IMG/VR virus record: IMGVR_UViG_3300011934_000017
Location: 1 to 64,000 of that record
Reading direction: 5' to 3' (one strand)
Length of the DNA stretch: 64,000 bases
How positions within the stretch are numbered: the first letter of the stretch is position 1; each line of letters begins with the position of its first letter. Shown here piece after piece: positions 1 through 9,242 of the stretch. The position numbers and the translations under genes were made by a program. The notes below the pieces were generated by a model. It had not been told where the DNA came from. It worked only from the letters and a program-made list of their open reading frames with translations, and did not search any database.

Positions 1-1
1 T

Positions 2-2650
2 GGTTCTCCGACAATGGGCGAAGGGCAGAGTCAAGACCTTGTACTTGAAGTTACCTATCAAGACGGTACTACTGAGCCACGCACTGCTTTCGAGTGGGCA
101 AGCTCTAACACCGCCGTAGCTACTGTGAATGCTTCCGGCAAAGTGCAGGCAGTTAACAATCTGCTGTCCAATCGTACTCTTATCATTTCAGCCGAGTACA
201 AAGAAAACGGTAAGACGGTAACTGCCAATCTGTCCCTGACTGTGACTGACGACACGAACTATCCTGTGAGTGCTGCTATCAAAGGTCCTGAAACAGTTAA
301 CGAAGATACTACCGTTACGTACACCCTTGAAGTTACCTTCCAAGATAGCTCTAAGGCCGTGCAGCCTGTATCGTCGTTTACTGTCTCTGACTCAGCGCTT
401 GGTACTATCACAAGCGATGGTCGCCTGACAGCGCCAGCTACAGTTTCTTCCAATGTTACTGGTCAAGTTCTTGCTGACTACACGCTAGATGGCACCACTG
501 TTTCGGCTGTTCTGGATATCACTGTTACAGACATTACGGTTTATCCTGCGTCTGCTAACATCATCGGTCCGTCTAACGTCGATGAAGAGTCTTCAACGAC
601 CTACATGTTAGAAGTCACCTTCAGCGATGCTACCAAGCGTAACGTAACGGTCTCTGATTGGGCAAGCAGCGATAACACAGTCGGTGTTATTGGTGCCTCT
701 ACAGGTGTTCTGAATACCCTGACAATCAGCGACGATTCTGCAATTTCGATTTCTGCAAGCTTCACAGAAAACGGCGTCACGGTGTCCGATAGCAAGAACA
801 TCATTGTTTCGGACACCACGAACTATCCAGTTAGCGCTGTTGTTCAAGGCAACAATGTTCTAACAGAAGGTGGGGGTGCAGTTACCTACAGCTTGAACGT
901 TAGCTTTAGTGACGGGCAGTCTCAGATAATGCCTGCTGCGTGGACTCAGACCAACACAAACGCAGGTACGCTAGACGCTTCGACAGGTTCGTTTATTCCC
1001 GCTTCCAACATTGTAGGCGGCGATAAGACAACCAAGATCGAAGGCACGTATACGCTGAACGGACAGACCGTGAAAGCTTCTGTCAACGTTACTGTTGAAG
1101 ATTTGACAGCTTATCCGACTAGCGCTACAATCGTTGGGCCTACAAGTGTAGATGAAGAAACAACGGTTACATACGAACTGCGTGTGGACTTTGATGATTC
1201 TTCTACATTGACCGTTCCAGCTACCGACTTCACTTCCAGTAATCCTGCTGCGGGTACAATCGACTCTGCTACAGGTGAGTTTGTCGCTGCTGTTAACGAT
1301 ACCGGCAGCAACGTATCGACGACGATTTCCGCATCATGGGAAGTTGATGGTGTTGTTCAGACAGGTACGCTGAACGTTGGTGTTGTTGATACCACAGTGT
1401 ACGTTGCTTCTACTCAGATCATTGGCCCAACAACACTCAATGAAGGTGAGTCAGCTACATACACCTTTGAACTAACCTACGATGATGGTATTTCCGCTAT
1501 TGTTGTAGTTCGTGATTGGGCTGTAGACAACACTACTGCGGCGACCATTACACAAGATGGTGAGCTTACCGTAAATAGCATCACTTCTGATCGTAACGTA
1601 ACGATTACAGCTTCTTATACGGACGATAAGGGTGTGCCGCACGGACAGTCTTTGATCGTTGACCTGAAAGACACGATCCTACGTCCTGTGTCGTTGCAAA
1701 TCAACGGTCCTGCGACTTTGCTTGAAGGTAGTCCAGGCACGTACTCTTCCGTCGTTACTTACGACAACGGAAGCACTGCTGGTGCCACTGTGACAGACTG
1801 GGCAATCACGCCCACAAGTCTGGGCAACTTCATTGGAAATGACCTTACTTCCAACGATATTGATGCAGACGAAAGCGGTACTATCACATGTTCCTATACT
1901 GAAAATGGAAGCACTGTATTTGGAACCAAGCCTATCACCGTGGAGCATATCTATCCCGATGGTGCTACGGTAACAGGCGTTGCTACTGTTAGTTCAGATG
2001 AGGTACAGACTTACAAGCTGTCTGTTTCACGTAGTGACGGTTCTAACACAGATGAAGTCGCCGCTTGGTCTATCAATTCTCAGATCGACGTTGATGGAAA
2101 TCCTGTAGTAGCGCCAGCCACCATTGACAGTGCTGGAGTCTTAACTGTTGGTACCGTTACAGAGGACGTTACGATTACCATCGAAGGCACATACGTTGAG
2201 AACGGTGTTACCGTTTCAAACACTCTTGACGTTGCTTTGGTAGTTAGCTTAGTTTCTGCTACCGCTGTGCCTAAGTGGGGCTTTGCAGGTTATGTGACGC
2301 CTGACTTTAACGTTGGCTTCTCTGGTCCACAAGCTTTCATTGACTCTCTTGTTAATGAAATGCCTGATCGTGAAAGCGGTCACACAATCACCTATCAGCT
2401 TGCTGCTGACGAGTATGCGTATTATGCTTGCCCGAAAGACATGGGTGAACCTACGTTTGTAGACATGGCAAGCAGCTTCAGCGGTGGTTGGGATGGGGCT
2501 TCGTGGTTAGATGATTATTCTAATCTGGATAATAAAGGTCCTGTAGAAGTAATGTACGATGCAGGAAATGGACCCGAACCATGGCTTATTTATCGTACCG
2601 ATTGGACGGGTCCGAATAGCAGTCCCGTCAATTTTCGAATTGACTTTTAA
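2..2650 (+). CDS. Ig-like (Big-type) repeat fibre protein with C-terminal WDGA domain; 5'-truncated by the window edge
   Basis: Eight ~95-aa repeats (YPxSAxIxGPxxVxE...YxLEVTFxD), very Thr/Ser/Val rich. The frame is open to position 2 (GSPTMGEG matches the GPxxVxE repeat start), so the ATG at 14 is probably internal. Confidence 0.8.
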   Translation, partial: GSPTMGEGQSQDLVLEVTYQDGTTEPRTAFEWASSNTAVATVNASGKVQAVNNLLSNRTLIISAEYKENGKTVTANLSLTVTDDTNYPVSAAIKGPETVNEDTTVTYTLEVTFQDSSKAVQPVSSFTVSDSALGTITSDGRLTAPATVSSNVTGQVLADYTLDGTTVSAVLDITVTDITVYPASANIIGPSNVDEESSTTYMLEVTFSDATKRNVTVSDWASSDNTVGVIGASTGVLNTLTISDDSAISISASFTENGVTVSDSKNIIVSDTTNYPVSAVVQGNNVLTEGGGAVTYSLNVSFSDGQSQIMPAAWTQTNTNAGTLDASTGSFIPASNIVGGDKTTKIEGTYTLNGQTVKASVNVTVEDLTAYPTSATIVGPTSVDEETTVTYELRVDFDDSSTLTVPATDFTSSNPAAGTIDSATGEFVAAVNDTGSNVSTTISASWEVDGVVQTGTLNVGVVDTTVYVASTQIIGPTTLNEGESATYTFELTYDDGISAIVVVRDWAVDNTTAATITQDGELTVNSITSDRNVTITASYTDDKGVPHGQSLIVDLKDTILRPVSLQINGPATLLEGSPGTYSSVVTYDNGSTAGATVTDWAITPTSLGNFIGNDLTSNDIDADESGTITCSYTENGSTVFGTKPITVEHIYPDGATVTGVATVSSDEVQTYKLSVSRSDGSNTDEVAAWSINSQIDVDGNPVVAPATIDSAGVLTVGTVTEDVTITIEGTYVENGVTVSNTLDVALVVSLVSATAVPKWGFAGYVTPDFNVGFSGPQAFIDSLVNEMPDRESGHTITYQLAADEYAYYACPKDMGEPTFVDMASSFSGGWDGASWLDDYSNLDNKGPVEVMYDAGNGPEPWLIYRTDWTGPNSSPVNFRIDF

Positions 2651-2660
2651 TCAGTAACCT

Positions 2661-2684
2661 AAGGGCGAGTACGCTCGCCCTTTT
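2661..2684 (+). terminator. Rho-independent terminator
   Basis: aagggcgag-TACG-ctcgccctt followed by tt; UNCG tetraloop. Confidence 0.8.
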
Positions 2685-2704
2685 ATCTCAAATGAGGTGT
2701 TAAA

Positions 2705-3415
2705 ATGGCAGTCCCACTTACGTCGTTTCTTTCGAAAGCTAGTCCGGCAATTCCGTTTCTGTTGAAAGACACAGACTTGCGCGGGGGTTATCGCGTTGTG
2801 TCTACAGAAGCCGATCGTGACGCTATCCCTACAGGTGCGAAAGCTCCAGGTATGTTGGTGTTCGTAACAGAAAACTCTACGTTCTTCCAATGGGATGGTG
2901 CAGCATTCCAACCGTTGGACGTTACGTCTATGGTAAATACCGGTACCGGTCTTACTATGGAAGCTGACGCTATCACTGTTGATACTGCACATCTGGATAC
3001 GTTGTACGCCCCGGTGACACACGATCATGATGCCAAGTATGCTGATATCAACCACGATCATGATACCCAGTATTCGGCGTTGACTCACGACCATGATGGT
3101 GATTATGCTCCGGCGACACACGATCATGATGCCAAGTATGCTGATATCAACCACGATCATGATACCCAGTATGCTGATATCAACCACGATCATGATGGTG
3201 ATTATGCTCCGGTAGTACACACGCATGATACCCAGTATGCTGATATCAACCACGATCATGATTCACAATACGCGGCGCTGACCCACTCTCACGCTTTTGC
3301 GAGTCTAACCGAAGTTCCGAAAGTAACAGCTATGCCCGGTGTTACTATTTCTACTTCTGAGCCTGCTCCTACTGACGGTGAAGACGGCGATCTTTGGTTT
3401 GTTATCGCACCTTAA
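2705..3415 (+). CDS. Fibre protein: N-terminal anchor domain, HxH repeats, C-terminal DGDLW motif
   Basis: RBS gaggtg; N-terminus paralogous to 51267..52067; nine HxH motifs; ends STSEPAPTDGEDGDLWFVIAP, a typical fibre-tip motif. Confidence 0.75.
   Translation: MAVPLTSFLSKASPAIPFLLKDTDLRGGYRVVSTEADRDAIPTGAKAPGMLVFVTENSTFFQWDGAAFQPLDVTSMVNTGTGLTMEADAITVDTAHLDTLYAPVTHDHDAKYADINHDHDTQYSALTHDHDGDYAPATHDHDAKYADINHDHDTQYADINHDHDGDYAPVVHTHDTQYADINHDHDSQYAALTHSHAFASLTEVPKVTAMPGVTISTSEPAPTDGEDGDLWFVIAP
3020..3292 (+). repeat. 33-nt tandem repeat (8 units plus a final HSH) encoding H(D/T)HDxxYAxxx
   Basis: cacgatcatgatgccaagtatgctgatatcaac-type units; contiguous and in frame. Confidence 0.95.
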
Positions 3416-3430
3416 TCGTTAGGAGGTTCC

Positions 3431-3979
3431 ATGGCTATTCTTACAAAACATCAAGGTACCATACGGAGTCTGAGTCGAGAAGATGTAGTCTTTAAACAAG
3501 GCGGTACGACAGTGCCGCCGGAACAAGGACTCATTAAAGTCTCCGATGTTTGGTACCCTCTGTTTCCCGCACTATCTCAAGCACATTGGGGTTATGCTCA
3601 ATACGCCGGACCCGATCTGATTGAAAATGGTTATTTGGGTCCTCAATCGTTCATTGAAGAAAATCTGACTTCACGACTTCCAGTTAAAAGTGGTGAAACT
3701 CTTACGTATAATCTGCCGGACGGTCAAACGTATGCGTACTTTGCCCATCCTGTTTCCTTTGGCGTTGCCTTGTTTACTGATCTAACAAGTAGCTTCCAAG
3801 GTTCGTGGGATGGCGCTAAGTGGTTAGATGACTTTTCTAACTTTGATGAAACTGGTCCTATTGAAGTCACTTTCGACGACGGTACTGGTCCTGCACAATG
3901 GTACGTATATCGTACTGATTGGGCGGGTCCTAGTTCTGATCCTTCACCGTTCCAGATTGATTATCCAAATCAACCTTAA
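3431..3979 (+). CDS. Putative fibre-tip/adhesin protein, WDGA domain
   Basis: RBS aggagg; N-terminal K..G...K.GG...GLIK.S..W.PL motif; C-terminal GSWDGAKW...WYVYRTDW domain shared with 2..2650. Confidence 0.7.
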   Translation: MAILTKHQGTIRSLSREDVVFKQGGTTVPPEQGLIKVSDVWYPLFPALSQAHWGYAQYAGPDLIENGYLGPQSFIEENLTSRLPVKSGETLTYNLPDGQTYAYFAHPVSFGVALFTDLTSSFQGSWDGAKWLDDFSNFDETGPIEVTFDDGTGPAQWYVYRTDWAGPSSDPSPFQIDYPNQP

Positions 3980-3983
3980 CGCT

Positions 3984-4013
3984 CAAAAAGCGGCTCTTTT
4001 GGGCCGCTTTTTG
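3984..4013 (+). terminator. Rho-independent (bidirectional-type) terminator
   Basis: caaaaagcggctc-tttt-gggccgctttttg. Confidence 0.8.
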
Positions 4014-4028
4014 TATCTGGAGATAATA

Positions 4029-4628
4029 ATGTCTGTTATAGTAAAAGACAGCGATGCACTTAAAAACATAACGCCTGCCGAATTTAAAATCAAACACTCT
4101 GGAAATGTAGTATCGCCGTTAAAAGGTTTGCTAAAGCACTCTGGAACGTGGCAACCTCTTTGGGCGGATACGTCTACAGAACCTGACGAACCAGCTACAG
4201 ACTCCCCTCTACCTGCAGGTGTTCCTCGTTGGGGAATTGCGCAATTTGCAGACACAGACTTCACAGGCGGCAAAACTGATCCTAACGCTGACGGTCAGCC
4301 CTATCAGCGCTGGACAGGCCCGCAAGACTTCATTGACACCATGTTGCAGACCTATGATTCGTCTTTGACTGTTACGATGGATGTTCCTTTTCCCGACTAC
4401 GGCTACTTTGCTGTTAAAGCGTCTGATGGTCAAGCTACTTTCTTAGATTCTCAGTACGGCTTTCCAGGTGGTTGGGATGGTGCTCAGTGGGAAGATGGTG
4501 GATTTGGTTCAGAAACTGGGCCTATCACAGTGACTTACGATGACGGTTCCGGACCTGCTCCTTGGCTTGTTTATCGCACAGATTTCTCTGGCATAGGCCA
4601 AATGACGTGGAATGTAACTATTGCATGA
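4029..4628 (+). CDS. Putative fibre-tip/adhesin protein, WDGA domain (paralog of 3431..3979)
   Basis: Start moved from 3828 to ATG 4029 (RBS ggag after the terminator); KHSG...KGLLKHSGTWQPL N-terminus; GGWDGAQW...WLVYRTDF C-terminus. Confidence 0.7.
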   Translation: MSVIVKDSDALKNITPAEFKIKHSGNVVSPLKGLLKHSGTWQPLWADTSTEPDEPATDSPLPAGVPRWGIAQFADTDFTGGKTDPNADGQPYQRWTGPQDFIDTMLQTYDSSLTVTMDVPFPDYGYFAVKASDGQATFLDSQYGFPGGWDGAQWEDGGFGSETGPITVTYDDGSGPAPWLVYRTDFSGIGQMTWNVTIA

Positions 4629-4638: not shown

Positions 4639-4687
4639 TATGTAAATCGCGGTGTCTCAAGCCCGCTACTATACCATAGGAGGTATT

Positions 4688-6157
4688 ATGTTTTTTGTTT
4701 CTATTGCGGCAAAAGGAATCGATCCTGAGGCATTTGCGTGGCTAGTTTTTACTCGTTCCACGAAGATGCAACTCAAAGGGTACAATCAACGCCACACTCT
4801 AGTTCTGTCTAAGGGTGATATATTTGGTGTCCGCAGAACCCGCTCAAACACCTACCAGATGGTAAAATCTGATTCTCTCCATGTCCTGTATCGCAACGTG
4901 CCTGCCGAAACATACAATCGTATTCTGAAAAATTGCATTGCATACAAAGGCACTCCTATTACGGAAGAAGAGGTAGAAGATGGCTTTAGTAGGAGTCGGC
5001 GAGTCTCTACCACAGAATCCACTCAGAAGTCCAACAAGCGAACGGATGACTTTTATAAACCGGGTTCTCGCATAATTGAGAAGTACCAGATTGATCAGAA
5101 TAACTATCAGTGGCGCAAGCTGCGAGAAGCTAATATCAAAGTGCTGTCTAAGAAACAAGGCAAGATTAAAGGGCTACTTAACTCTGGCGATGTTATAGGT
5201 CTTCGATACTCTACACCTGCACGCGGTGGTTACGTTCTTCTTGACGGAAACAAACGAATCAACATATCTCATGAAATGTACTCCGAACTTGTTCATGCTT
5301 CCCGAGTGCTTCCTGATTCTCAGCAAAAAGATGATGTGGTCGATCTTGGAAGTGGTTTGTCTGATTCTGAAATAAAAGAAAAGATGCAGGAAGAGGCCAA
5401 AGTTGCCAAAGAGCGAAAAGCCAAGAATGCTCCTGCGCCGGTAGAGGAAGAGCCTATCGAAAAGCTGTATGATATAGGTGATCTTTCAGACGACGAGCTT
5501 CTGGAACAAAATACATTCAAAAAAGACAAACGCAATCGTAATCTACGGCGAATGGTAAGAAAGCTGTTGGAAGTACCGGAACAAGATGTTTGGGTAGACG
5601 AAGATGAAGCTAAAGAAAAGGACTTCGAGGATGAAGAGCTGGAAGATGTAGATGCTGAGTCGGAAGCTCCAGAAGAGTCTGAAGACTTTGAAGACGAAGA
5701 GGATAACGACGATGGACTGGACGATAATCTTTCCGATGACCTTCCTGATGATTCTGATAACGACGATTCTGACGGTGAGTTTGAAGACGAGGAAGACCTT
5801 GAAGATGAAGAAGACCCAGAAGAAGCCGAACGCAAAGAAAGTCGAGTAGTTGAAGAGCTGCAACCTGGAAACATTGTTCAAATCAAGAAAGGAACTAAGC
5901 GGAAGCTTGTTGTTATTGACGCTTCTCCTATGGAAAGGAATGAGAATTTAATAGAGTATATCCTGCATGATCCAACAGCCGACGAAGACGACCAAGACTT
6001 TAGCTTATATAGGCTGCGTCTGAACGTTAATACCACTTTTGCTAAGTTCGAAGAAAGTGCGGACCTTTTGGATGAAACATTCGATGACAAACAGTTAAAA
6101 GCAATACAGGACTCTATGGAATATGCTGACATTAAATCTATCTCTTTCGTCAAATAG
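4688..6157 (+). CDS. Hypothetical (likely virion) protein with beta-barrel-like segments and a long acidic linker
   Basis: Start moved to ATG 4688 (RBS aggagg); long D/E tract. Confidence 0.75.
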   Translation: MFFVSIAAKGIDPEAFAWLVFTRSTKMQLKGYNQRHTLVLSKGDIFGVRRTRSNTYQMVKSDSLHVLYRNVPAETYNRILKNCIAYKGTPITEEEVEDGFSRSRRVSTTESTQKSNKRTDDFYKPGSRIIEKYQIDQNNYQWRKLREANIKVLSKKQGKIKGLLNSGDVIGLRYSTPARGGYVLLDGNKRINISHEMYSELVHASRVLPDSQQKDDVVDLGSGLSDSEIKEKMQEEAKVAKERKAKNAPAPVEEEPIEKLYDIGDLSDDELLEQNTFKKDKRNRNLRRMVRKLLEVPEQDVWVDEDEAKEKDFEDEELEDVDAESEAPEESEDFEDEEDNDDGLDDNLSDDLPDDSDNDDSDGEFEDEEDLEDEEDPEEAERKESRVVEELQPGNIVQIKKGTKRKLVVIDASPMERNENLIEYILHDPTADEDDQDFSLYRLRLNVNTTFAKFEESADLLDETFDDKQLKAIQDSMEYADIKSISFVK

Positions 6158-6167
6158 GAGCGTTGTC

Positions 6168-8144
6168 GTGCCTCCTCGTCCTTCTTGGTTCAATCTACGT
6201 GCGATTAAAAAGAATCCGGCTGACTATGTGCAAGACCTAAATAAAAAAGAGTCGGTTGATCTTGCACAATATATGGATTATCGGTATCATGAAAAGAATA
6301 AGCCTGTCGTCGATGATGAAGTATACGACCTTCTTATCGATCATATCAAAGACAAGTATCCGAAGGCTGCTTACCTAAAGAAAGTCGGACACAAAGTAAC
6401 GACAAAAGGACGCAAAGAGGTCCAGCTTCCTGTTCACATGTCCTCACTGAGTAAGATTAAACCTTCTTCTACAGGGATTGAAAGTCATATACAAGGAAGC
6501 TTGGTCGTATCTGAAAAGCTGGACGGAATTAGTCTGCTGCTTGAATACAAGAACGGTGTTCCTTACGCTTGCTATACGCGGGGAAATGGCGTTCGAGGAC
6601 AAGATGTTTCTGGTGTGCTGTCTGCGCTAGACATTCCAAAACGTGTATCTGTCAAAGCGGAATTTTACGTTCGATGCGAGTTTATTATCAAGCGTAAATC
6701 GTTCACGGACAAACATGCCAGCTCTTCTGGAAAAGGTACGTACAAGACAAGTCGAAACATGGGTGGTGGTCTACTGACACGTAACGAACCTTCTTCTGCC
6801 GTTCGTGACTTTGATGTTGTAGCTTACGAAATACCTAAAGGCAAAGGTGCTGGTAAGCCTATTTCACAACAGCTTGCTGAACTGAAGCGCATGGGCTTTA
6901 GTGTTGTTCGACATAAGAAATATTCTGGTCTTACCGTAGATCGCCTGACTAAGATTCATGACAACGTTCGAGCCAAGTCTCCTTACGATGTTGATGGAAT
7001 TGTGGTAGCTCAAGATAAAGCGTATCGTGTATCGTCCAGTAATCCAAAACACGCGAAAGCATTCAAGGTCAATTCTCTTGAGGCAACCAAAATCGTCAAA
7101 GTGAAAGACATTGTTTGGAAGCGTTCTCGCCACGGCAAATGGATTCCTCGTGTTGTTGTTGATCCTGTTCAACTTGGTGGTGTTTCTGTGACGTCCTTTA
7201 CAGGGCATAGCTACTACTACATTCAAAACGGTTTCCGGTACCAAGATCGTAACAAGCAACTTCCTGTACGCCCGTTAAACGTAGGTGCAGAGATTCGCGT
7301 AGTGAGAAGTGGTGACGTTATTCCGTACATCATGGAAGTCGTTAAACCTGCGCGTAAACCCGCACAGCCTGATGTTGCATTCACGTTAGACAATACAGGC
7401 GTTCACGCTTTAGATATCGTAGAAAAAGGCGCCAAGCTCGACGACACTCAGAAAGTCCAGCGTATTGTCCACTTCTTTAGCGCTATGCAAATGAAAGGTA
7501 TTAAAAGCGGTATTGTGGAAAAGCTTTATGCTTCAGGCTTTAAAACCCTGCGTTCGATTCTACATGCTCCACCAGAAAAGCTTATGAAAGCTGAAGGTAT
7601 CCAACAAAAGACAGCCGAGAACATCGTTAAGACCGTTCAACTAGGTCTTGCTAAGAATGCGACGTTTGCCAATCTGGGTTATGCAAGTTCAATCTTCGGT
7701 GACAAGATAGGTAGAACGAAGCTTCAGGCCACAATCGACGAAATTCCGGATATTGTTCAACTGTCTACGACGCTCAGCCCTCTTCAGCTTCGAGATAGAA
7801 TAGCGGAAGTAGAAGGCATTAAAACTCAGGCTACCATCATTGCGAAACGATTGCCTAAGTTCATTCGCTTCTTGGAGCTTAATCGAATCAAGATCGGAAG
7901 TGAAGTTAAGCAGAAGAAACAAAGCAGCCGACTGGAAGGCATGAAGGTGCTGTTTACTTCCGTTCGTGATGACGACCTGCTTACCGCTATTCAGGCTAAC
8001 GGTGGTCAGAAAGCTAGTTCTGTTAAGTCTGCTACCCATCTTGTTATCAAGCCCGGTGCCTCTAACAAGAAGACAGATGAGGCTGAAGAGCTAGGAATCC
8101 CTATGCTCACCGTCGATGAATTCCGTAAGAAATTTAAACTTTAA
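6168..8144 (+). CDS. ligA: NAD-dependent DNA ligase
   Basis: SEKLDG adenylation motif, TRGNG, DGIVV, AFK, RSGDVIP, HhH repeats, C-terminal BRCT-like domain; GTG start at 6168 with RBS aggag. Confidence 0.93.
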   Translation: MPPRPSWFNLRAIKKNPADYVQDLNKKESVDLAQYMDYRYHEKNKPVVDDEVYDLLIDHIKDKYPKAAYLKKVGHKVTTKGRKEVQLPVHMSSLSKIKPSSTGIESHIQGSLVVSEKLDGISLLLEYKNGVPYACYTRGNGVRGQDVSGVLSALDIPKRVSVKAEFYVRCEFIIKRKSFTDKHASSSGKGTYKTSRNMGGGLLTRNEPSSAVRDFDVVAYEIPKGKGAGKPISQQLAELKRMGFSVVRHKKYSGLTVDRLTKIHDNVRAKSPYDVDGIVVAQDKAYRVSSSNPKHAKAFKVNSLEATKIVKVKDIVWKRSRHGKWIPRVVVDPVQLGGVSVTSFTGHSYYYIQNGFRYQDRNKQLPVRPLNVGAEIRVVRSGDVIPYIMEVVKPARKPAQPDVAFTLDNTGVHALDIVEKGAKLDDTQKVQRIVHFFSAMQMKGIKSGIVEKLYASGFKTLRSILHAPPEKLMKAEGIQQKTAENIVKTVQLGLAKNATFANLGYASSIFGDKIGRTKLQATIDEIPDIVQLSTTLSPLQLRDRIAEVEGIKTQATIIAKRLPKFIRFLELNRIKIGSEVKQKKQSSRLEGMKVLFTSVRDDDLLTAIQANGGQKASSVKSATHLVIKPGASNKKTDEAEELGIPMLTVDEFRKKFKL

Positions 8145-8153
8145 GGAACAATC

Positions 8154-9242
8154 ATGCAACGAATCGCCGTATACGCAATCGCAAAGAACGAAGAAGAACA
8201 TGTGGATCGCTGGATGGAGTCTGCTCGATATGCTGATGGAATCTTCGTTTTAGATACAGGCAGTACCGACTTTACTAACACTTTCTTGCGCCAGCACGGT
8301 GTGAAGGTAATAGAGGCTCTTATTGAGCCTTTTCGCTTTGATGTAGCCCGTAACATGATTCTCAATCAAATAGATTCGGACAAATACGATTATGCTTTGT
8401 TTCTGGACATGGACGAAGTGTTGGAAGAAAACTGGTATTCGAATCTTCAGGAGATACTGCTAGAGCATCCTCACGCTACAGGACTCCACACACGTATGAT
8501 TTACACGGAGAACAGTGACGGTACTCCTGCTGTCACGTACAATCGTCTCATGTGTACCAAGGTAGGCGATTATGAATGGAAATATCCTGTACATGAGGTA
8601 CTTGTAGCGAAAGACGAAGAAAAGGCTAACGAAATTTACTCGGATATTCTGGTCTATCATTATCCCGATGAAGAAAAAAGCCGTTCAAGTTACCTGAATT
8701 TGTTGAAGCTAGGCGCTCGTGAAGAACCTAACGATCCTCGTTGTTCTCAGTATCTAGCACGGGAATACTTTTCTTTAGGTCAACACGAACACGCTATTCA
8801 AGAATATTCGAACCACCTAGCGCTCGAAAGTAACCCTTGGTTTCGATCAGAAAGCTATCGTAATATGGCGCACTGTTACGAACACCTTGGCCACACGTTA
8901 GAATCTAGGAACTGCCATTTGTTTTCTTGCGCCGAAGCTCCTGATATACGCGAGTCCTGGGGAGAAGCCTGTGCGTTCTACTATCGTATGGATAGAATAC
9001 ACTCGGCTTTGAGCTGTATTGAAAACATGTTAGATGTTCAAGAACCTCCTACACACTCCATTATCAGGAATGACGCTTATTACAACTCTTGGCCTCATCA
9101 CATGGCTGCCATTTGTTACGACAGACTAGGAGACGAAGAGAAAGCAAGACAGCATATCCAACTTGCTTTTCAGTTATCTCCAGGGGATCCTGCTATTGCT
9201 TCGGACCTGATGACCATCTGCGATATTCAGGTTCAACCCTAG
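8154..9242 (+). CDS. Family 2 glycosyltransferase with C-terminal TPR repeats
   Basis: IAKNEE...DTGSTD...FDVARN...LDMDE (DxD)...VHE; helical TPR-like C-terminal half. Confidence 0.85.
   Translation: MQRIAVYAIAKNEEEHVDRWMESARYADGIFVLDTGSTDFTNTFLRQHGVKVIEALIEPFRFDVARNMILNQIDSDKYDYALFLDMDEVLEENWYSNLQEILLEHPHATGLHTRMIYTENSDGTPAVTYNRLMCTKVGDYEWKYPVHEVLVAKDEEKANEIYSDILVYHYPDEEKSRSSYLNLLKLGAREEPNDPRCSQYLAREYFSLGQHEHAIQEYSNHLALESNPWFRSESYRNMAHCYEHLGHTLESRNCHLFSCAEAPDIRESWGEACAFYYRMDRIHSALSCIENMLDVQEPPTHSIIRNDAYYNSWPHHMAAICYDRLGDEEKARQHIQLAFQLSPGDPAIASDLMTICDIQVQP

What the first reader, a model, noticed from the sequence alone, without database searches (positions are those of the whole stretch)
2..4628. 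Modular fibre system: one WDGA tip domain fused to an Ig fibre and also encoded twice as stand-alone tips
Seen: the last ~130 aa of the Ig-repeat fibre and the C-termini of 3431..3979 and 4029..4628 share one domain (WG.A...GPQ.FI...Y.YFA...G.WDGA.W...GPI.V..D.G.G...W.VYRTD). The two small proteins also share an N-terminal K..G...GL.K.S..W.PL motif. The HxH fibre between them ends in a DGDLW motif and has no head domain of its own. Known: T2/S16-type fibres carry separately encoded gp38 adhesins docked by Trp-containing N-termini. Inference: the HxH fibre is capped by either of two interchangeable tips, so one unnamed binding fold is shown on at least three appendage types.
Basis: partly seen in the sequence, partly recalled or inferred. 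Interest (0 to 1): 0.7.

Follow-up and report, generated by a model that had tools for sequence, protein, structure and literature searches.

The report
Headless phage fibre with plug-in tips
An uncultured jumbo phage from a stromatolite sample puts one uncharacterised ~125-residue domain on a long fibre, its baseplate and two small separate proteins, and structure modelling suggests these dock on a short fibre with no head of its own, much as gp38 adhesins cap T-even phage fibres.

Summary
The last ~127 aa of the Ig-repeat protein (2..2650), most of 3431..3979 (small A) and most of 4029..4628 (small B) share one domain, at 40-51% identity. A and B also share a ~45-aa N-terminus. The HxH fibre (2705..3415) ends 40 aa after its last HxH, with no globular head.

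- The domain occurs 11 times in 5 proteins of this 217-kb PaBG-like jumbo myophage, including 7 copies in a baseplate-module protein.
- The family is small: 325 clusters in 1.84 billion proteins, mostly at the extreme C-terminus. It has no Pfam match and no convincing PDB match.
- The gene order sheath, 212 aa, giant, fibre, A, B is kept in four relatives. The fibre shafts differ, but the last 40 aa are nearly invariant.
- A and B are each modelled as three beta-hairpins followed by a beta-sandwich.
- A model of three fibre C-termini with one A scored ipSAE 0.74 against 0.00 for the best control. All three fibre chains touch the three hairpins.

This is a gp38-like cap built from unrelated folds. 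Binding, presence in virions, the ligand, and whether A and B are alternatives are all untested.

The parts
2..2650 (+). C-terminal 882 aa of a 1501-aa giant Ig-repeat fibre. The gene starts at G000 215210, before the window. Layout: N-terminal anchor (~220 aa), 12 Ig-like repeats of ~94 aa, then a terminal WDGA domain.
   Evidence: ORF list and whole-genome frame. Pfam Big_2, E 2e-07. PHROG 14098 'tail protein', E 2.4e-110. Twelve repeats by self-HMM. In the same position as the PaBG 1524-aa tail protein. The PaBG 159.7-kDa 'long tail fibre' gp215 was found in virions by MS (PMC7412058, Table 1); equating the two rests on gene order and size.
2267..2647 (+). WDGA domain copy at the very end of the giant fibre.
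   Evidence: Alignments A1 and A2. HMM hit, E 2.7e-70.
2661..2686 (+). GC-rich hairpin followed by a T-run (terminator-like) between the giant gene and the fibre gene.
   Evidence: A comparable hairpin is present at this place in all four relatives examined (L012, L018, L019, L024).
2705..3415 (+). Short HxH fibre, 236 aa, with no head of its own.
   Evidence: Orthologues P0159-P0163 and those in L012, L018, L019, L021 and L024.
2705..2989 (+). Conserved N-terminal anchor domain of the fibre (aa 1-95).
   Evidence: 44% identity over 80 aa to the N-terminus of PaBG O152_gp270, which sits at the same genomic position. PHROG 23630. Conserved in all orthologues.
3011..3295 (+). Shaft of nine 11-residue H-D/T/S-H-D..Y.... 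units. It is variable in length and type among orthologues.
   Evidence: Tandem repeat, periods 33 and 99 bp. Orthologues have 2 or more HxH units or PTR-type repeats (PF12789) instead. Unitigs break here.
3293..3412 (+). Conserved 40-aa C-terminal 'socket' (H.H.FASL..VPKVTAMPGVT.ST.EP..DG.DGDLWFV..).
   Evidence: 17 invariant columns in 8 orthologues. Motif unique in the genome. Residues 208, 215 and 219-235 of all three modelled chains touch small A.
3431..3979 (+). Small A, 182 aa: a stand-alone WDGA protein.
   Evidence: Orthologues at 52-80% identity. AF2 model pLDDT 93.4, pTM 0.83.
3431..3562 (+). Three-hairpin 'plug' of small A (aa 1-44): three internal repeats of about 15 aa (hydrophobics, K, G, then W or a hydrophobic).
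   Evidence: Strands 4-7/10-13, 21-23/26-28 and 34-37/40-43. Interface residues 1-44 in the complex model. Alignment A6.
3578..3976 (+). WDGA beta-sandwich of small A (aa 50-182).
   Evidence: The most conserved segment is the long irregular loop at aa 123-143 (G-x-W-D-G-A-x-W ... G-P).
3984..4013 (+). Terminator-like hairpin between small A and small B.
   Evidence: A hairpin of different sequence sits at the same place in 3 of the 4 relatives examined (L012, L019, L024, not L018).
4029..4628 (+). Small B, 199 aa: a second stand-alone WDGA protein. Layout: hairpin plug (aa 1-44, nt 4029-4160), floppy acidic/Pro linker (aa 45-63), then WDGA sandwich (aa 64-199, nt 4218-4625) with a 13-aa insert absent from small A and the giant tip in the alignments, present in all six type-B sequences recovered.
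   Evidence: AF2 model pLDDT 89.2 with the same three hairpins and low confidence at 55-57. The type-B sequences are consistent with a lineage of their own, though its branch is weakly supported.

Best explanation
The region is the distal part of a tail-appendage gene cluster of an uncultured PaBG-like jumbo myophage. It uses one autonomous ~125-residue beta-sandwich (the 'WDGA' domain) as a common surface-adhesion module and mounts it in several ways.

1. It is fused covalently to the end of a 1501-aa fibre made of an anchor plus 12 Ig-like repeats.
2. It is repeated seven times in a baseplate-module protein, and it occurs once inside a 719-aa reading frame (~684-aa protein). Both lie outside the reported region.
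3. It is carried on two small separate proteins, A and B.

The short HxH fibre is a trimer with three parts: a conserved N-terminal anchor, a shaft of variable length, and a conserved 40-aa C-terminal socket but no head. Small A is monomeric. Its N-terminal 44 residues fold into three consecutive beta-hairpins, a pseudo-threefold plug. The three hairpins engage the three symmetry-related C-terminal segments of the fibre trimer (residues 208, 215 and 219-235, including DGDLWFV). This hangs one WDGA domain on the tip. Small B has the same plug and a longer flexible linker, and it is inferred to use the same socket. A virion could then carry fibres tipped with A or with B.

The WDGA domain most likely binds a common cell-surface component, probably a glycan, through its highly conserved Trp/Asp-rich loop. 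That would give multivalent, low-specificity first contact.

Shown here: domain sharing, copy number, synteny, conservation patterns and confident monomer models. Modelled with controls only: docking of A on the fibre. Inferred: trimer state, B docking, A and B as alternatives, presence in virions and ligand binding.
For: **Domain sharing and copy number.**
-.

**The family.**
- It has 325 representative clusters at E<=1e-3.
- Of 154 hit proteins examined, 135 end with the domain within 8 aa of the C-terminus, 30 have several copies and 42 are 230 aa or shorter.
- BFVD, AFDB and Atlas fold matches are almost all C-termini of phage tail-fibre, tail or baseplate proteins. These include PaBG, Lu11, Erwinia phage Y3 and Dickeya phage JA11.

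**Structural context.**
- The gene order sheath, 212 aa, giant, fibre, A, B, KMPT-N protein, NAD ligase is seen here and in relatives.
- PaBG has the same frame. Its proteome lists a sheath (gp213), a 20.8-kDa tail component (gp214) and a 159.7-kDa long tail fibre (gp215) in virions (PMC7412058, Table 1).
- The 1978-aa protein follows gp25-like and gp6/J-like wedge genes.

**Socket and plug.**
- The fibre ends are conserved while the shaft varies.
- Socket motif and plug are each unique in the genome.
- PaBG's positional counterpart shares only the anchor, has its own 240-aa distal part, and has no A or B beside it.
- Complex model: ipSAE 0.72, 0.74 and 0.75, best of 3 controls 0.00. The mark was reached by 58 of 80 solved complexes and 2 of 110 mismatched pairs. 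All three fibre chains use the same residues against A residues 1-44.
- No PDB sequence homologue of socket, plug or domain exists, so the pass is unlikely to come from memory.
- B has the same predicted hairpins.

**Module exchange.**
- In relative L024 the giant's tip and small A are sisters (support 100/98, 77% identity).
- The PaBG giant tip is closest to type B.
Against: - There is no experimental datum for this phage. It is known only from a metagenome.
- The complex test was calibrated on pairs of single chains with other alignments, so its error rates hold only roughly. Only the 3:1 stoichiometry was tried.
- B was not modelled with the fibre.
- The plug is less conserved (21-56% identity to A) than the WDGA domain (60-71% among type-A domains, apart from the divergent L021 copy). 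The most conserved part of the domain is a loop. That is unlike a fast-evolving receptor-binding tip and also fits a purely structural role.
- Fold similarity to carbohydrate-binding sandwiches is weak: best VIA Z 4.8, Atlas TM 0.50 or lower.
- A small protein encoded just after a fibre gene is also the classical position of an assembly chaperone.
Confidence: 0.6

Rival explanations
1. A and B are fibre assembly chaperones, like T4 gp38 or lambda/Mu Tfa. They bind the fibre C-terminus while it folds but are not, or only incidentally, part of the virion, and they do not recognise the host.
For: They are encoded directly downstream of the fibre gene, with a 15-nt gap and a strong ribosome-binding site for A. 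They are predicted to bind the fibre C-terminus. T4 gp38 is such a chaperone (PMC6851490).
Against: Their larger part is the same autonomous domain that ends the giant fibre and is repeated in the baseplate-module protein, and the giant's PaBG counterpart is a virion component (PMC7412058). There is no match to Tfa or GP38 families. A and B are each recognisable in all five genomes where the whole cluster was recovered, which is unexpected for redundant chaperones.
Confidence: 0.12
2. The predicted docking is a false positive. A and B attach elsewhere on the tail (for example the sheath, the 212-aa protein or the baseplate), or they are free proteins, and the fibre's conserved C-terminus serves another purpose.
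For: Only one in-silico test was run, with user-supplied alignments and a multi-copy set-up outside the calibration. Beta-strand addition is easy for a model to propose. The plug is only moderately conserved.
Against: All three controls scored 0.00, and the three runs agree on 97-99% of contacts. Socket and plug co-occur strictly and are adjacent in the eight places examined here and in relatives. Each is unique in the genome. PaBG's counterpart of the fibre has its own distal part instead of this ending, and no A or B lies beside it.
Confidence: 0.12
3. Docking is real, but the WDGA domain is not a host-receptor binder. It is a structural or decoration module (stabilising, spacing, or sticking to environmental polymers such as mat exopolysaccharide, as proposed for Ig-like phage decorations). 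Host recognition then lies with the other tail fibres of the baseplate cluster.
For: It occurs as seven tandem copies inside a baseplate-module protein and once inside a 719-aa reading frame. The domain and its Trp/Asp loop are highly conserved across phages. There are three further tail-fibre genes (252, 602 and 920 aa) in the baseplate cluster. The source is a stromatolite or microbial mat.
Against: 135 of 154 family members examined carry it at the extreme C-terminus, the usual place of the binding end of fibres. Two type-specific lineages (A/G and B), one with a conserved extra loop, suggest different ligands.
Confidence: 0.2
4. A and B are not alternatives. Either three small proteins bind per trimer (3:3), or A and B bind together, giving a fixed hetero-oligomeric tip.
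For: Both genes are kept side by side in the five genomes where the whole cluster was recovered. Only 3:1 with A was modelled.
Against: In the model one A uses all three hairpins and occupies all three fibre chains, leaving no equivalent site. A terminator-like hairpin separates A from B here and in 3 of the 4 relatives examined (L012, L019, L024), which suggests unequal dosage.
Confidence: 0.15

Closest known systems
Salmonella phage S16 / T2-type long tail fibre tip, (gp37)3-gp38 (PDB 6F45; PMC6851490, section 2.7)
   Same: A separately encoded protein, made from the gene just after the fibre gene, caps a homotrimeric fibre as a monomer. Three consecutive elements of its N-terminus make symmetry-equivalent contacts around the threefold axis, and the rest of the protein is the adhesin.
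   Different: There is no sequence or fold relation: no PF05268 hit and Atlas TM 0.32 to GP38 clusters. The plug here is modelled as three beta-hairpins with one invariant Trp, not a three-helix bundle with three Trp. The head is a beta-sandwich, not a polyglycine sandwich. There are two paralogous caps. The same head domain is also fused to other tail proteins.
Pseudomonas phage PaBG (Baikalvirus): sheath, tail component gp214, long tail fibre gp215 cluster (PMC7412058)
   Same: Same gene frame: helicase, polymerase, sheath, ~212-aa protein, ~1500-aa fibre ending in the WDGA domain, short fibre with the same N-anchor, KMPT-N protein, NAD ligase. PaBG also has multi-copy and stand-alone WDGA proteins.
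   Different: PaBG's short fibre has its own 240-aa distal part and lacks the GDLWF socket. It has no A- or B-type capped proteins. Its 139-aa stand-alone protein has a different, short N-terminal peptide and lies elsewhere.
HxH / 'phage tail repeat' fibres (Pfam PF12789 PTR; T4 gp37 needle with His-x-His metal sites, recalled from general knowledge)
   Same: Repeated His-x-His motifs in a thin trimeric shaft. Orthologues of this fibre match PF12789.
   Different: This copy itself does not reach any Pfam threshold. Its units are a very regular 11-residue H-D-H-D..Y.... repeat. Metal binding was not tested.
Tail fibre assembly proteins that stay on the tip (Mu, P2 and lambda Tfa; recalled from general knowledge)
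   Same: A small protein encoded after the fibre gene that binds the fibre's C-terminal end.
   Different: No homology. Here the small proteins carry a domain also used as a covalent fibre tip.

Membership tests
gp38 tail-fibre adhesins (Pfam PF05268 GP38) | Sequence match to the GP38 family | tested here: not met
   No Pfam family for A or B at E<=0.1.
gp38 tail-fibre adhesins (Pfam PF05268 GP38) | Glycine-rich motifs forming a polyglycine sandwich, and a helical N-terminal attachment domain | tested here: not met
   The AF2 models show beta-hairpins followed by a beta-sandwich. TM to a GP38 cluster is 0.32.
gp38 tail-fibre adhesins (Pfam PF05268 GP38) | A monomer caps the C-terminal end of a trimeric fibre encoded just upstream | tested here: inconclusive
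   Gene order is met. The 3:1 model scored ipSAE 0.74 against 0.00 for the best control. There is no experiment.
Tail fibre assembly proteins (Tfa / Caudo_TAP) | Sequence match to the family | tested here: not met
   No Pfam hit. PHROG hits are to 'tail protein' 14098 only.
Phage tail repeat fibres (PF12789 PTR) | Match to the PTR repeat with HxH motifs | tested here: inconclusive
   P0002 itself has no Pfam hit. Its orthologue in L012 hits PF12789 at 1e-10, and P0160-P0163 carry it. HxH motifs are present nine times.
Bacterial Ig-like domain group 2 (PF02368 Big_2) | Match above the gathering score | tested here: met
   31.3 bits against a cut-off of 22.8 for the giant. Twelve ~94-aa repeats.
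PHROG 14098 'tail protein' | Profile match | tested here: met
   Giant 2.4e-110, A 1.4e-16, B 8.9e-18. The 1978-aa protein scores 2.3e-287.
PaBG-like jumbo myophages | Shared gene order and homologous tail proteins | tested here: met
   Genome-wide phylogeny was not done.
Carbohydrate-binding beta-sandwich modules (CBM / galactose-binding-like / 7TMR-DISMED2) | Clear fold match | tested here: inconclusive
   Foldseek against PDB: best E 0.15. VIA wide: best Z 4.8, to C-terminal sandwiches of glycoside hydrolases. Atlas TM 0.41-0.50.
Carbohydrate-binding beta-sandwich modules (CBM / galactose-binding-like / 7TMR-DISMED2) | Demonstrated sugar binding | not testable with these tools
   Needs a glycan array or cell binding.

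The most novel reading that the evidence does not exclude
The 44-residue three-hairpin N-terminus and the 40-residue fibre C-terminus form a previously undescribed, self-contained plug-and-socket pair. It lets a monomeric adhesin sit on a threefold fibre tip. The phage lineage uses it, together with exchange of the WDGA head between the long fibre and the caps, to display two ligand specificities (types A/G and B) in a coordinated way on the long fibres, short fibres and baseplate of one virion.
Probability: 0.35. Interest if true: 0.7.

Novelty: new variant of a known kind. Interest (0 to 1): 0.55.

Why it matters
Separately encoded fibre-tip adhesins are well understood mainly for T-even phages. 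Here the same architectural solution, a monomer on a trimer through three matched contacts, appears to have arisen from unrelated folds in an uncultured jumbo-phage lineage. A single uncharacterised domain is re-used on at least four tail components.

If confirmed, three things follow:
- It would give a function to a small family of phage-tail domains that has no Pfam entry or solved structure.
- It would help explain what the many appendages of PaBG-like 'hairy' jumbo phages are made of. The hair proteins were still reported as unknown (PMC6143709).
- It would show how receptor-binding modules move between fibres within a genome.

Tried and rejected
- **Nucleotide search.** Megablast of the region against cultured phages found nothing, so there is no close cultured relative.
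- **Family searches.** Pfam gave nothing for the fibre, A or B.
- **PDB by sequence.** Searches with the domain profile, the socket profile, the plug profile and the whole fibre gave only chance-level hits: a mosquitocidal toxin fragment at E 0.029, streptogramin lactonase, galectin.
- **PDB by fold.** No convincing match by Foldseek or VIA.
- **Read-through idea.** The 212-aa gene and the giant gene are in the same frame, separated by one stop. I rejected read-through because the relative L012 has them in different frames and the giant has its own ribosome-binding site and ATG.
- **PHROG 'tail sheath' label.** I did not adopt this label for the C-terminus of the 719-aa ORF, because BLASTP against this phage's own sheath shows no similarity.
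- **Recent gene conversion in L024.** The giant tip and small A there are 73% identical in DNA over 373 nt, so any exchange is not recent.
- **Not obtainable.** The Erwinia phage Y3 paper with virion data is not held. Only one complex job was allowed, so B with the fibre, the 3:3 stoichiometry and the partners of the fibre anchor could not be modelled.

Full report
**What is in the sequence**

The window starts inside a gene. The whole record is 220,237 bp, and its first 3172 bp are repeated exactly at its end. The Ig-repeat protein therefore continues upstream. It is 1501 aa long, made of three parts:
- an N-terminal ~220-aa domain;
- twelve contiguous ~94-aa Ig-like repeats (Pfam Big_2);
- a terminal ~127-aa domain.

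Downstream lie these genes:
- the 236-aa HxH fibre (2705..3415);
- small A (3431..3979, 182 aa);
- small B (4029..4628, 199 aa);
- an acidic KMPT-N protein;
- an NAD-dependent ligase.

They are mutually significant, at E 2e-41 and 3e-21.

An HMM of the three copies finds eleven copies in five proteins of this genome:
- the giant;
- small A;
- small B;
- a 1978-aa protein with six tandem copies in its N-terminal half and a seventh at its very end;
- a 719-aa reading frame with one internal copy.

The 1978-aa gene follows gp25-like and gp6/J-like baseplate wedge genes and precedes a set of tail-fibre genes. It therefore belongs to the baseplate module.

A profile of the eleven copies, run against 1.84 billion representative proteins, finds only 325 clusters. 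Of 154 hit proteins examined, 135 carry the domain within 8 residues of the C-terminus, 30 have several copies and 42 are 230 aa or shorter.

Pfam has no model for it. PHROGs knows it only as part of 'tail protein' 14098.

**Fold**

With a 148-sequence alignment, AlphaFold2 models small A at pLDDT 93.4 and pTM 0.83. The model has three short beta-hairpins (residues 4-43) followed by a beta-sandwich (residues 50-177).

Searches with this model gave:
- Foldseek against the PDB: nothing, best E 0.15.
- An exhaustive VIA search: at best Z 4.8, against C-terminal sandwich domains of glycoside hydrolases.
- Atlas shape matches to sensor or carbohydrate-binding sandwiches: TM 0.50 or lower.
- Predicted viral structures: strong matches at the C-termini of tail, tail-fibre and baseplate proteins of PaBG, Lu11, Erwinia phage Y3, Dickeya phage JA11 and many uncultured phages.

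The most conserved stretch of the domain is not a strand. It is a 21-residue irregular loop carrying G-G-W-D-G-A-x-W ... G-P. I read this as a conserved ligand or ion site, but that is inference.

**Who the phage is**

The best protein-level relatives among cultured phages are PaBG, Lu11, phage NCTB and the Dickeya and Erwinia 'hairy' jumbo myophages.

PaBG shares the gene frame: helicase, polymerase, sheath, ~212-aa protein, ~1500-aa protein ending in this domain, short fibre, KMPT-N protein, ligase. The PaBG proteome lists a sheath (gp213), a 20.8-kDa tail component (gp214) and a 159.7-kDa long tail fibre (gp215) in virions (PMC7412058, Table 1). By position and size these correspond to the sheath, the 212-aa protein and the giant here.

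The source of the record is a stromatolite metagenome. Close relatives come from marine metagenomes.

**The fibre and the two small proteins behave as one unit**

The order giant, fibre, A, B is seen here and in four relatives (L012, L018, L019, L024). Short contigs (L014, L015, L021, L022) show fibre, A and B adjacent.

Among the fibre orthologues:
- The first ~95 residues and the last ~40 residues are conserved, with 17 invariant columns in the last 43.
- The shaft ranges from 2 HxH units to long PTR-type repeats, giving proteins of 173 aa to more than 400 aa.
- None has a globular end.

The GDLWF-type ending occurs only in this fibre in the whole genome. The N-terminal ~45 residues shared by A and B occur only in those two proteins.

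PaBG's protein at the same position shares only the N-terminal anchor (44% identity). It has 240 residues of its own beyond that, and it has no A or B next to it. A headless fibre travelling with caps, against a headed fibre without caps, is the pattern expected if A and B supply the head.

**Docking model**

I gave the complex predictor three copies of the last 73 fibre residues (with 8 orthologues) and one copy of small A (with its alignment).
- The three runs scored ipSAE 0.72, 0.74 and 0.75, and the best of three controls scored 0.00.
- The tool's mark was reached by 58 of 80 solved complexes and 2 of 110 mismatched pairs.
- The tool warns that these counts hold only roughly, because my own alignments and several copies were used.
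- Each of the three fibre chains contributes the same residues: fragment 45, 52 and 56-72, which are fibre residues 208, 215 and 219-235. Small A contributes residues 1-44, that is all three hairpins.

The plug is an internal triplication. Each hairpin has hydrophobic residues, a Lys, a Gly and then an aromatic or hydrophobic residue. A single chain with three repeats matching a threefold tip is the principle seen in S16 (gp37)3-gp38. There, three helices each insert a Trp every 120 degrees (PMC6851490). Here it would be realised with hairpins.

There is no solved sequence homologue of socket, plug or head, so the pass is unlikely to be recall.

Small B is modelled at pLDDT 89.2. It has hairpins at the same positions, a low-confidence linker (residues 45-62) and the same sandwich. 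Its docking on the same socket is inferred, not tested.

**Are A and B different?**
- The type-B sequences resemble one another (55-80% identity) more than they resemble type A or the giant tips, consistent with a lineage of their own, although the branch joining them is weakly supported (48/64). All carry a 13-aa insert (G-G-K-x-x-P-N...Y..W). The PaBG giant tip is closest to this type.
- Type-A domains and giant tips are interleaved in the tree. In relative L024 the giant's tip and small A are sisters, with support 100/98 and 77% identity. Their DNA is only 73% identical, so the exchange is not recent.

So the head has moved between the long fibre and the cap at least once. Two head types are kept side by side. 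That argues that both are functional and not redundant.

A terminator-like hairpin lies between A and B here and in 3 of the 4 relatives examined (L012, L019, L024), with different sequences. Another follows the giant gene in all of them. This may set unequal doses of A and B.

**What remains open**

Nothing here shows that A or B is in the virion, that the fibre is a trimer, that A and B compete, or that the domain binds anything.

The plug is less conserved than the head. The head's best-conserved part is a loop. Both facts fit a generic, conserved ligand, or a structural role, better than a fast-evolving specific receptor binder.

The chaperone reading cannot be excluded. It is made less likely because the same domain sits on the giant fibre, whose PaBG counterpart is a virion protein, and on the baseplate-module protein.

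**Verdict**

The capping interpretation gains conservation, co-occurrence and control-tested modelling support for A. The 'interchangeable' and 'binding' parts stay inferred. The system works like a gp38-type adhesin on a fibre tip, but it is not a member of that family. It is a new variant of a known kind, built on a domain family without a solved structure.

Noticed in passing
window 1-3172 (= G000 217066-220237): The record's exact 3172-bp 'direct terminal repeat' ends inside the tandem HxH repeat of the fibre gene, at the end of a 58-bp public unitig (3115-3172). It looks like an assembly overlap of a circular or permuted genome (unique length 217,065 bp), not a packaging terminus. The number of HxH units is therefore uncertain.
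   Followed up: partly
G000 214556-215194 (L011 9557-10195), just upstream of the window: A 212-aa gene between the sheath gene and the giant is a stand-alone paralogue of the giant's own N-terminal ~220 aa (35% identity, E 2e-32). The anchor module, like the head module, therefore exists both free and fused. The PaBG proteome lists a 20.8-kDa tail component (gp214) between its sheath and long tail fibre, which fits this gene by position and size.
   Followed up: partly
G000 87086-93019 (-) and 105528-107684 (-): A 1978-aa baseplate-module protein carries seven WDGA copies plus Ig-like repeats. A 719-aa reading frame near the portal gene carries one internal copy. A PHROG calls its C-terminus 'tail sheath', but it shows no similarity to this phage's own sheath.
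   Followed up: partly
window 2661-2686 and 3984-4013: There are terminator-like hairpins after the giant gene and between small A and small B. The A/B hairpin is kept as a structure with different sequence in 3 of the 4 relatives examined (L012, L019, L024), which may lower the dose of B.
   Followed up: partly
L024 5605-6213: In one relative a 202-aa second short fibre follows small B. It has the same N-terminal anchor as the HxH fibre but its own globular end. The anchor site may therefore accept both headed and headless fibres.
   Followed up: no
proteins P0094, P0102, P0103, P0112, P0117, P0126 and PaBG O152_gp257 (L017 20282-20701): Many stand-alone WDGA proteins of ~130-140 aa from other phages carry a different short N-terminal peptide (M, hydrophobic residues, then Y-K/R-x-P) instead of the three hairpins. 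This may be a second class of docking signal.
   Followed up: no
window 4652-6157, 6123-8144 and 8154-9242: The acidic 501-aa protein has a KMPT-N domain, and its end overlaps the start of the NAD-dependent DNA ligase gene by 35 nt. This pair directly follows the appendage genes in PaBG and in the marine relatives where that flank was recovered (L012, L018, L019). The next ORF corresponds to a glycosyltransferase/TPR protein in relatives; this window's copy was not tested directly.
   Followed up: no
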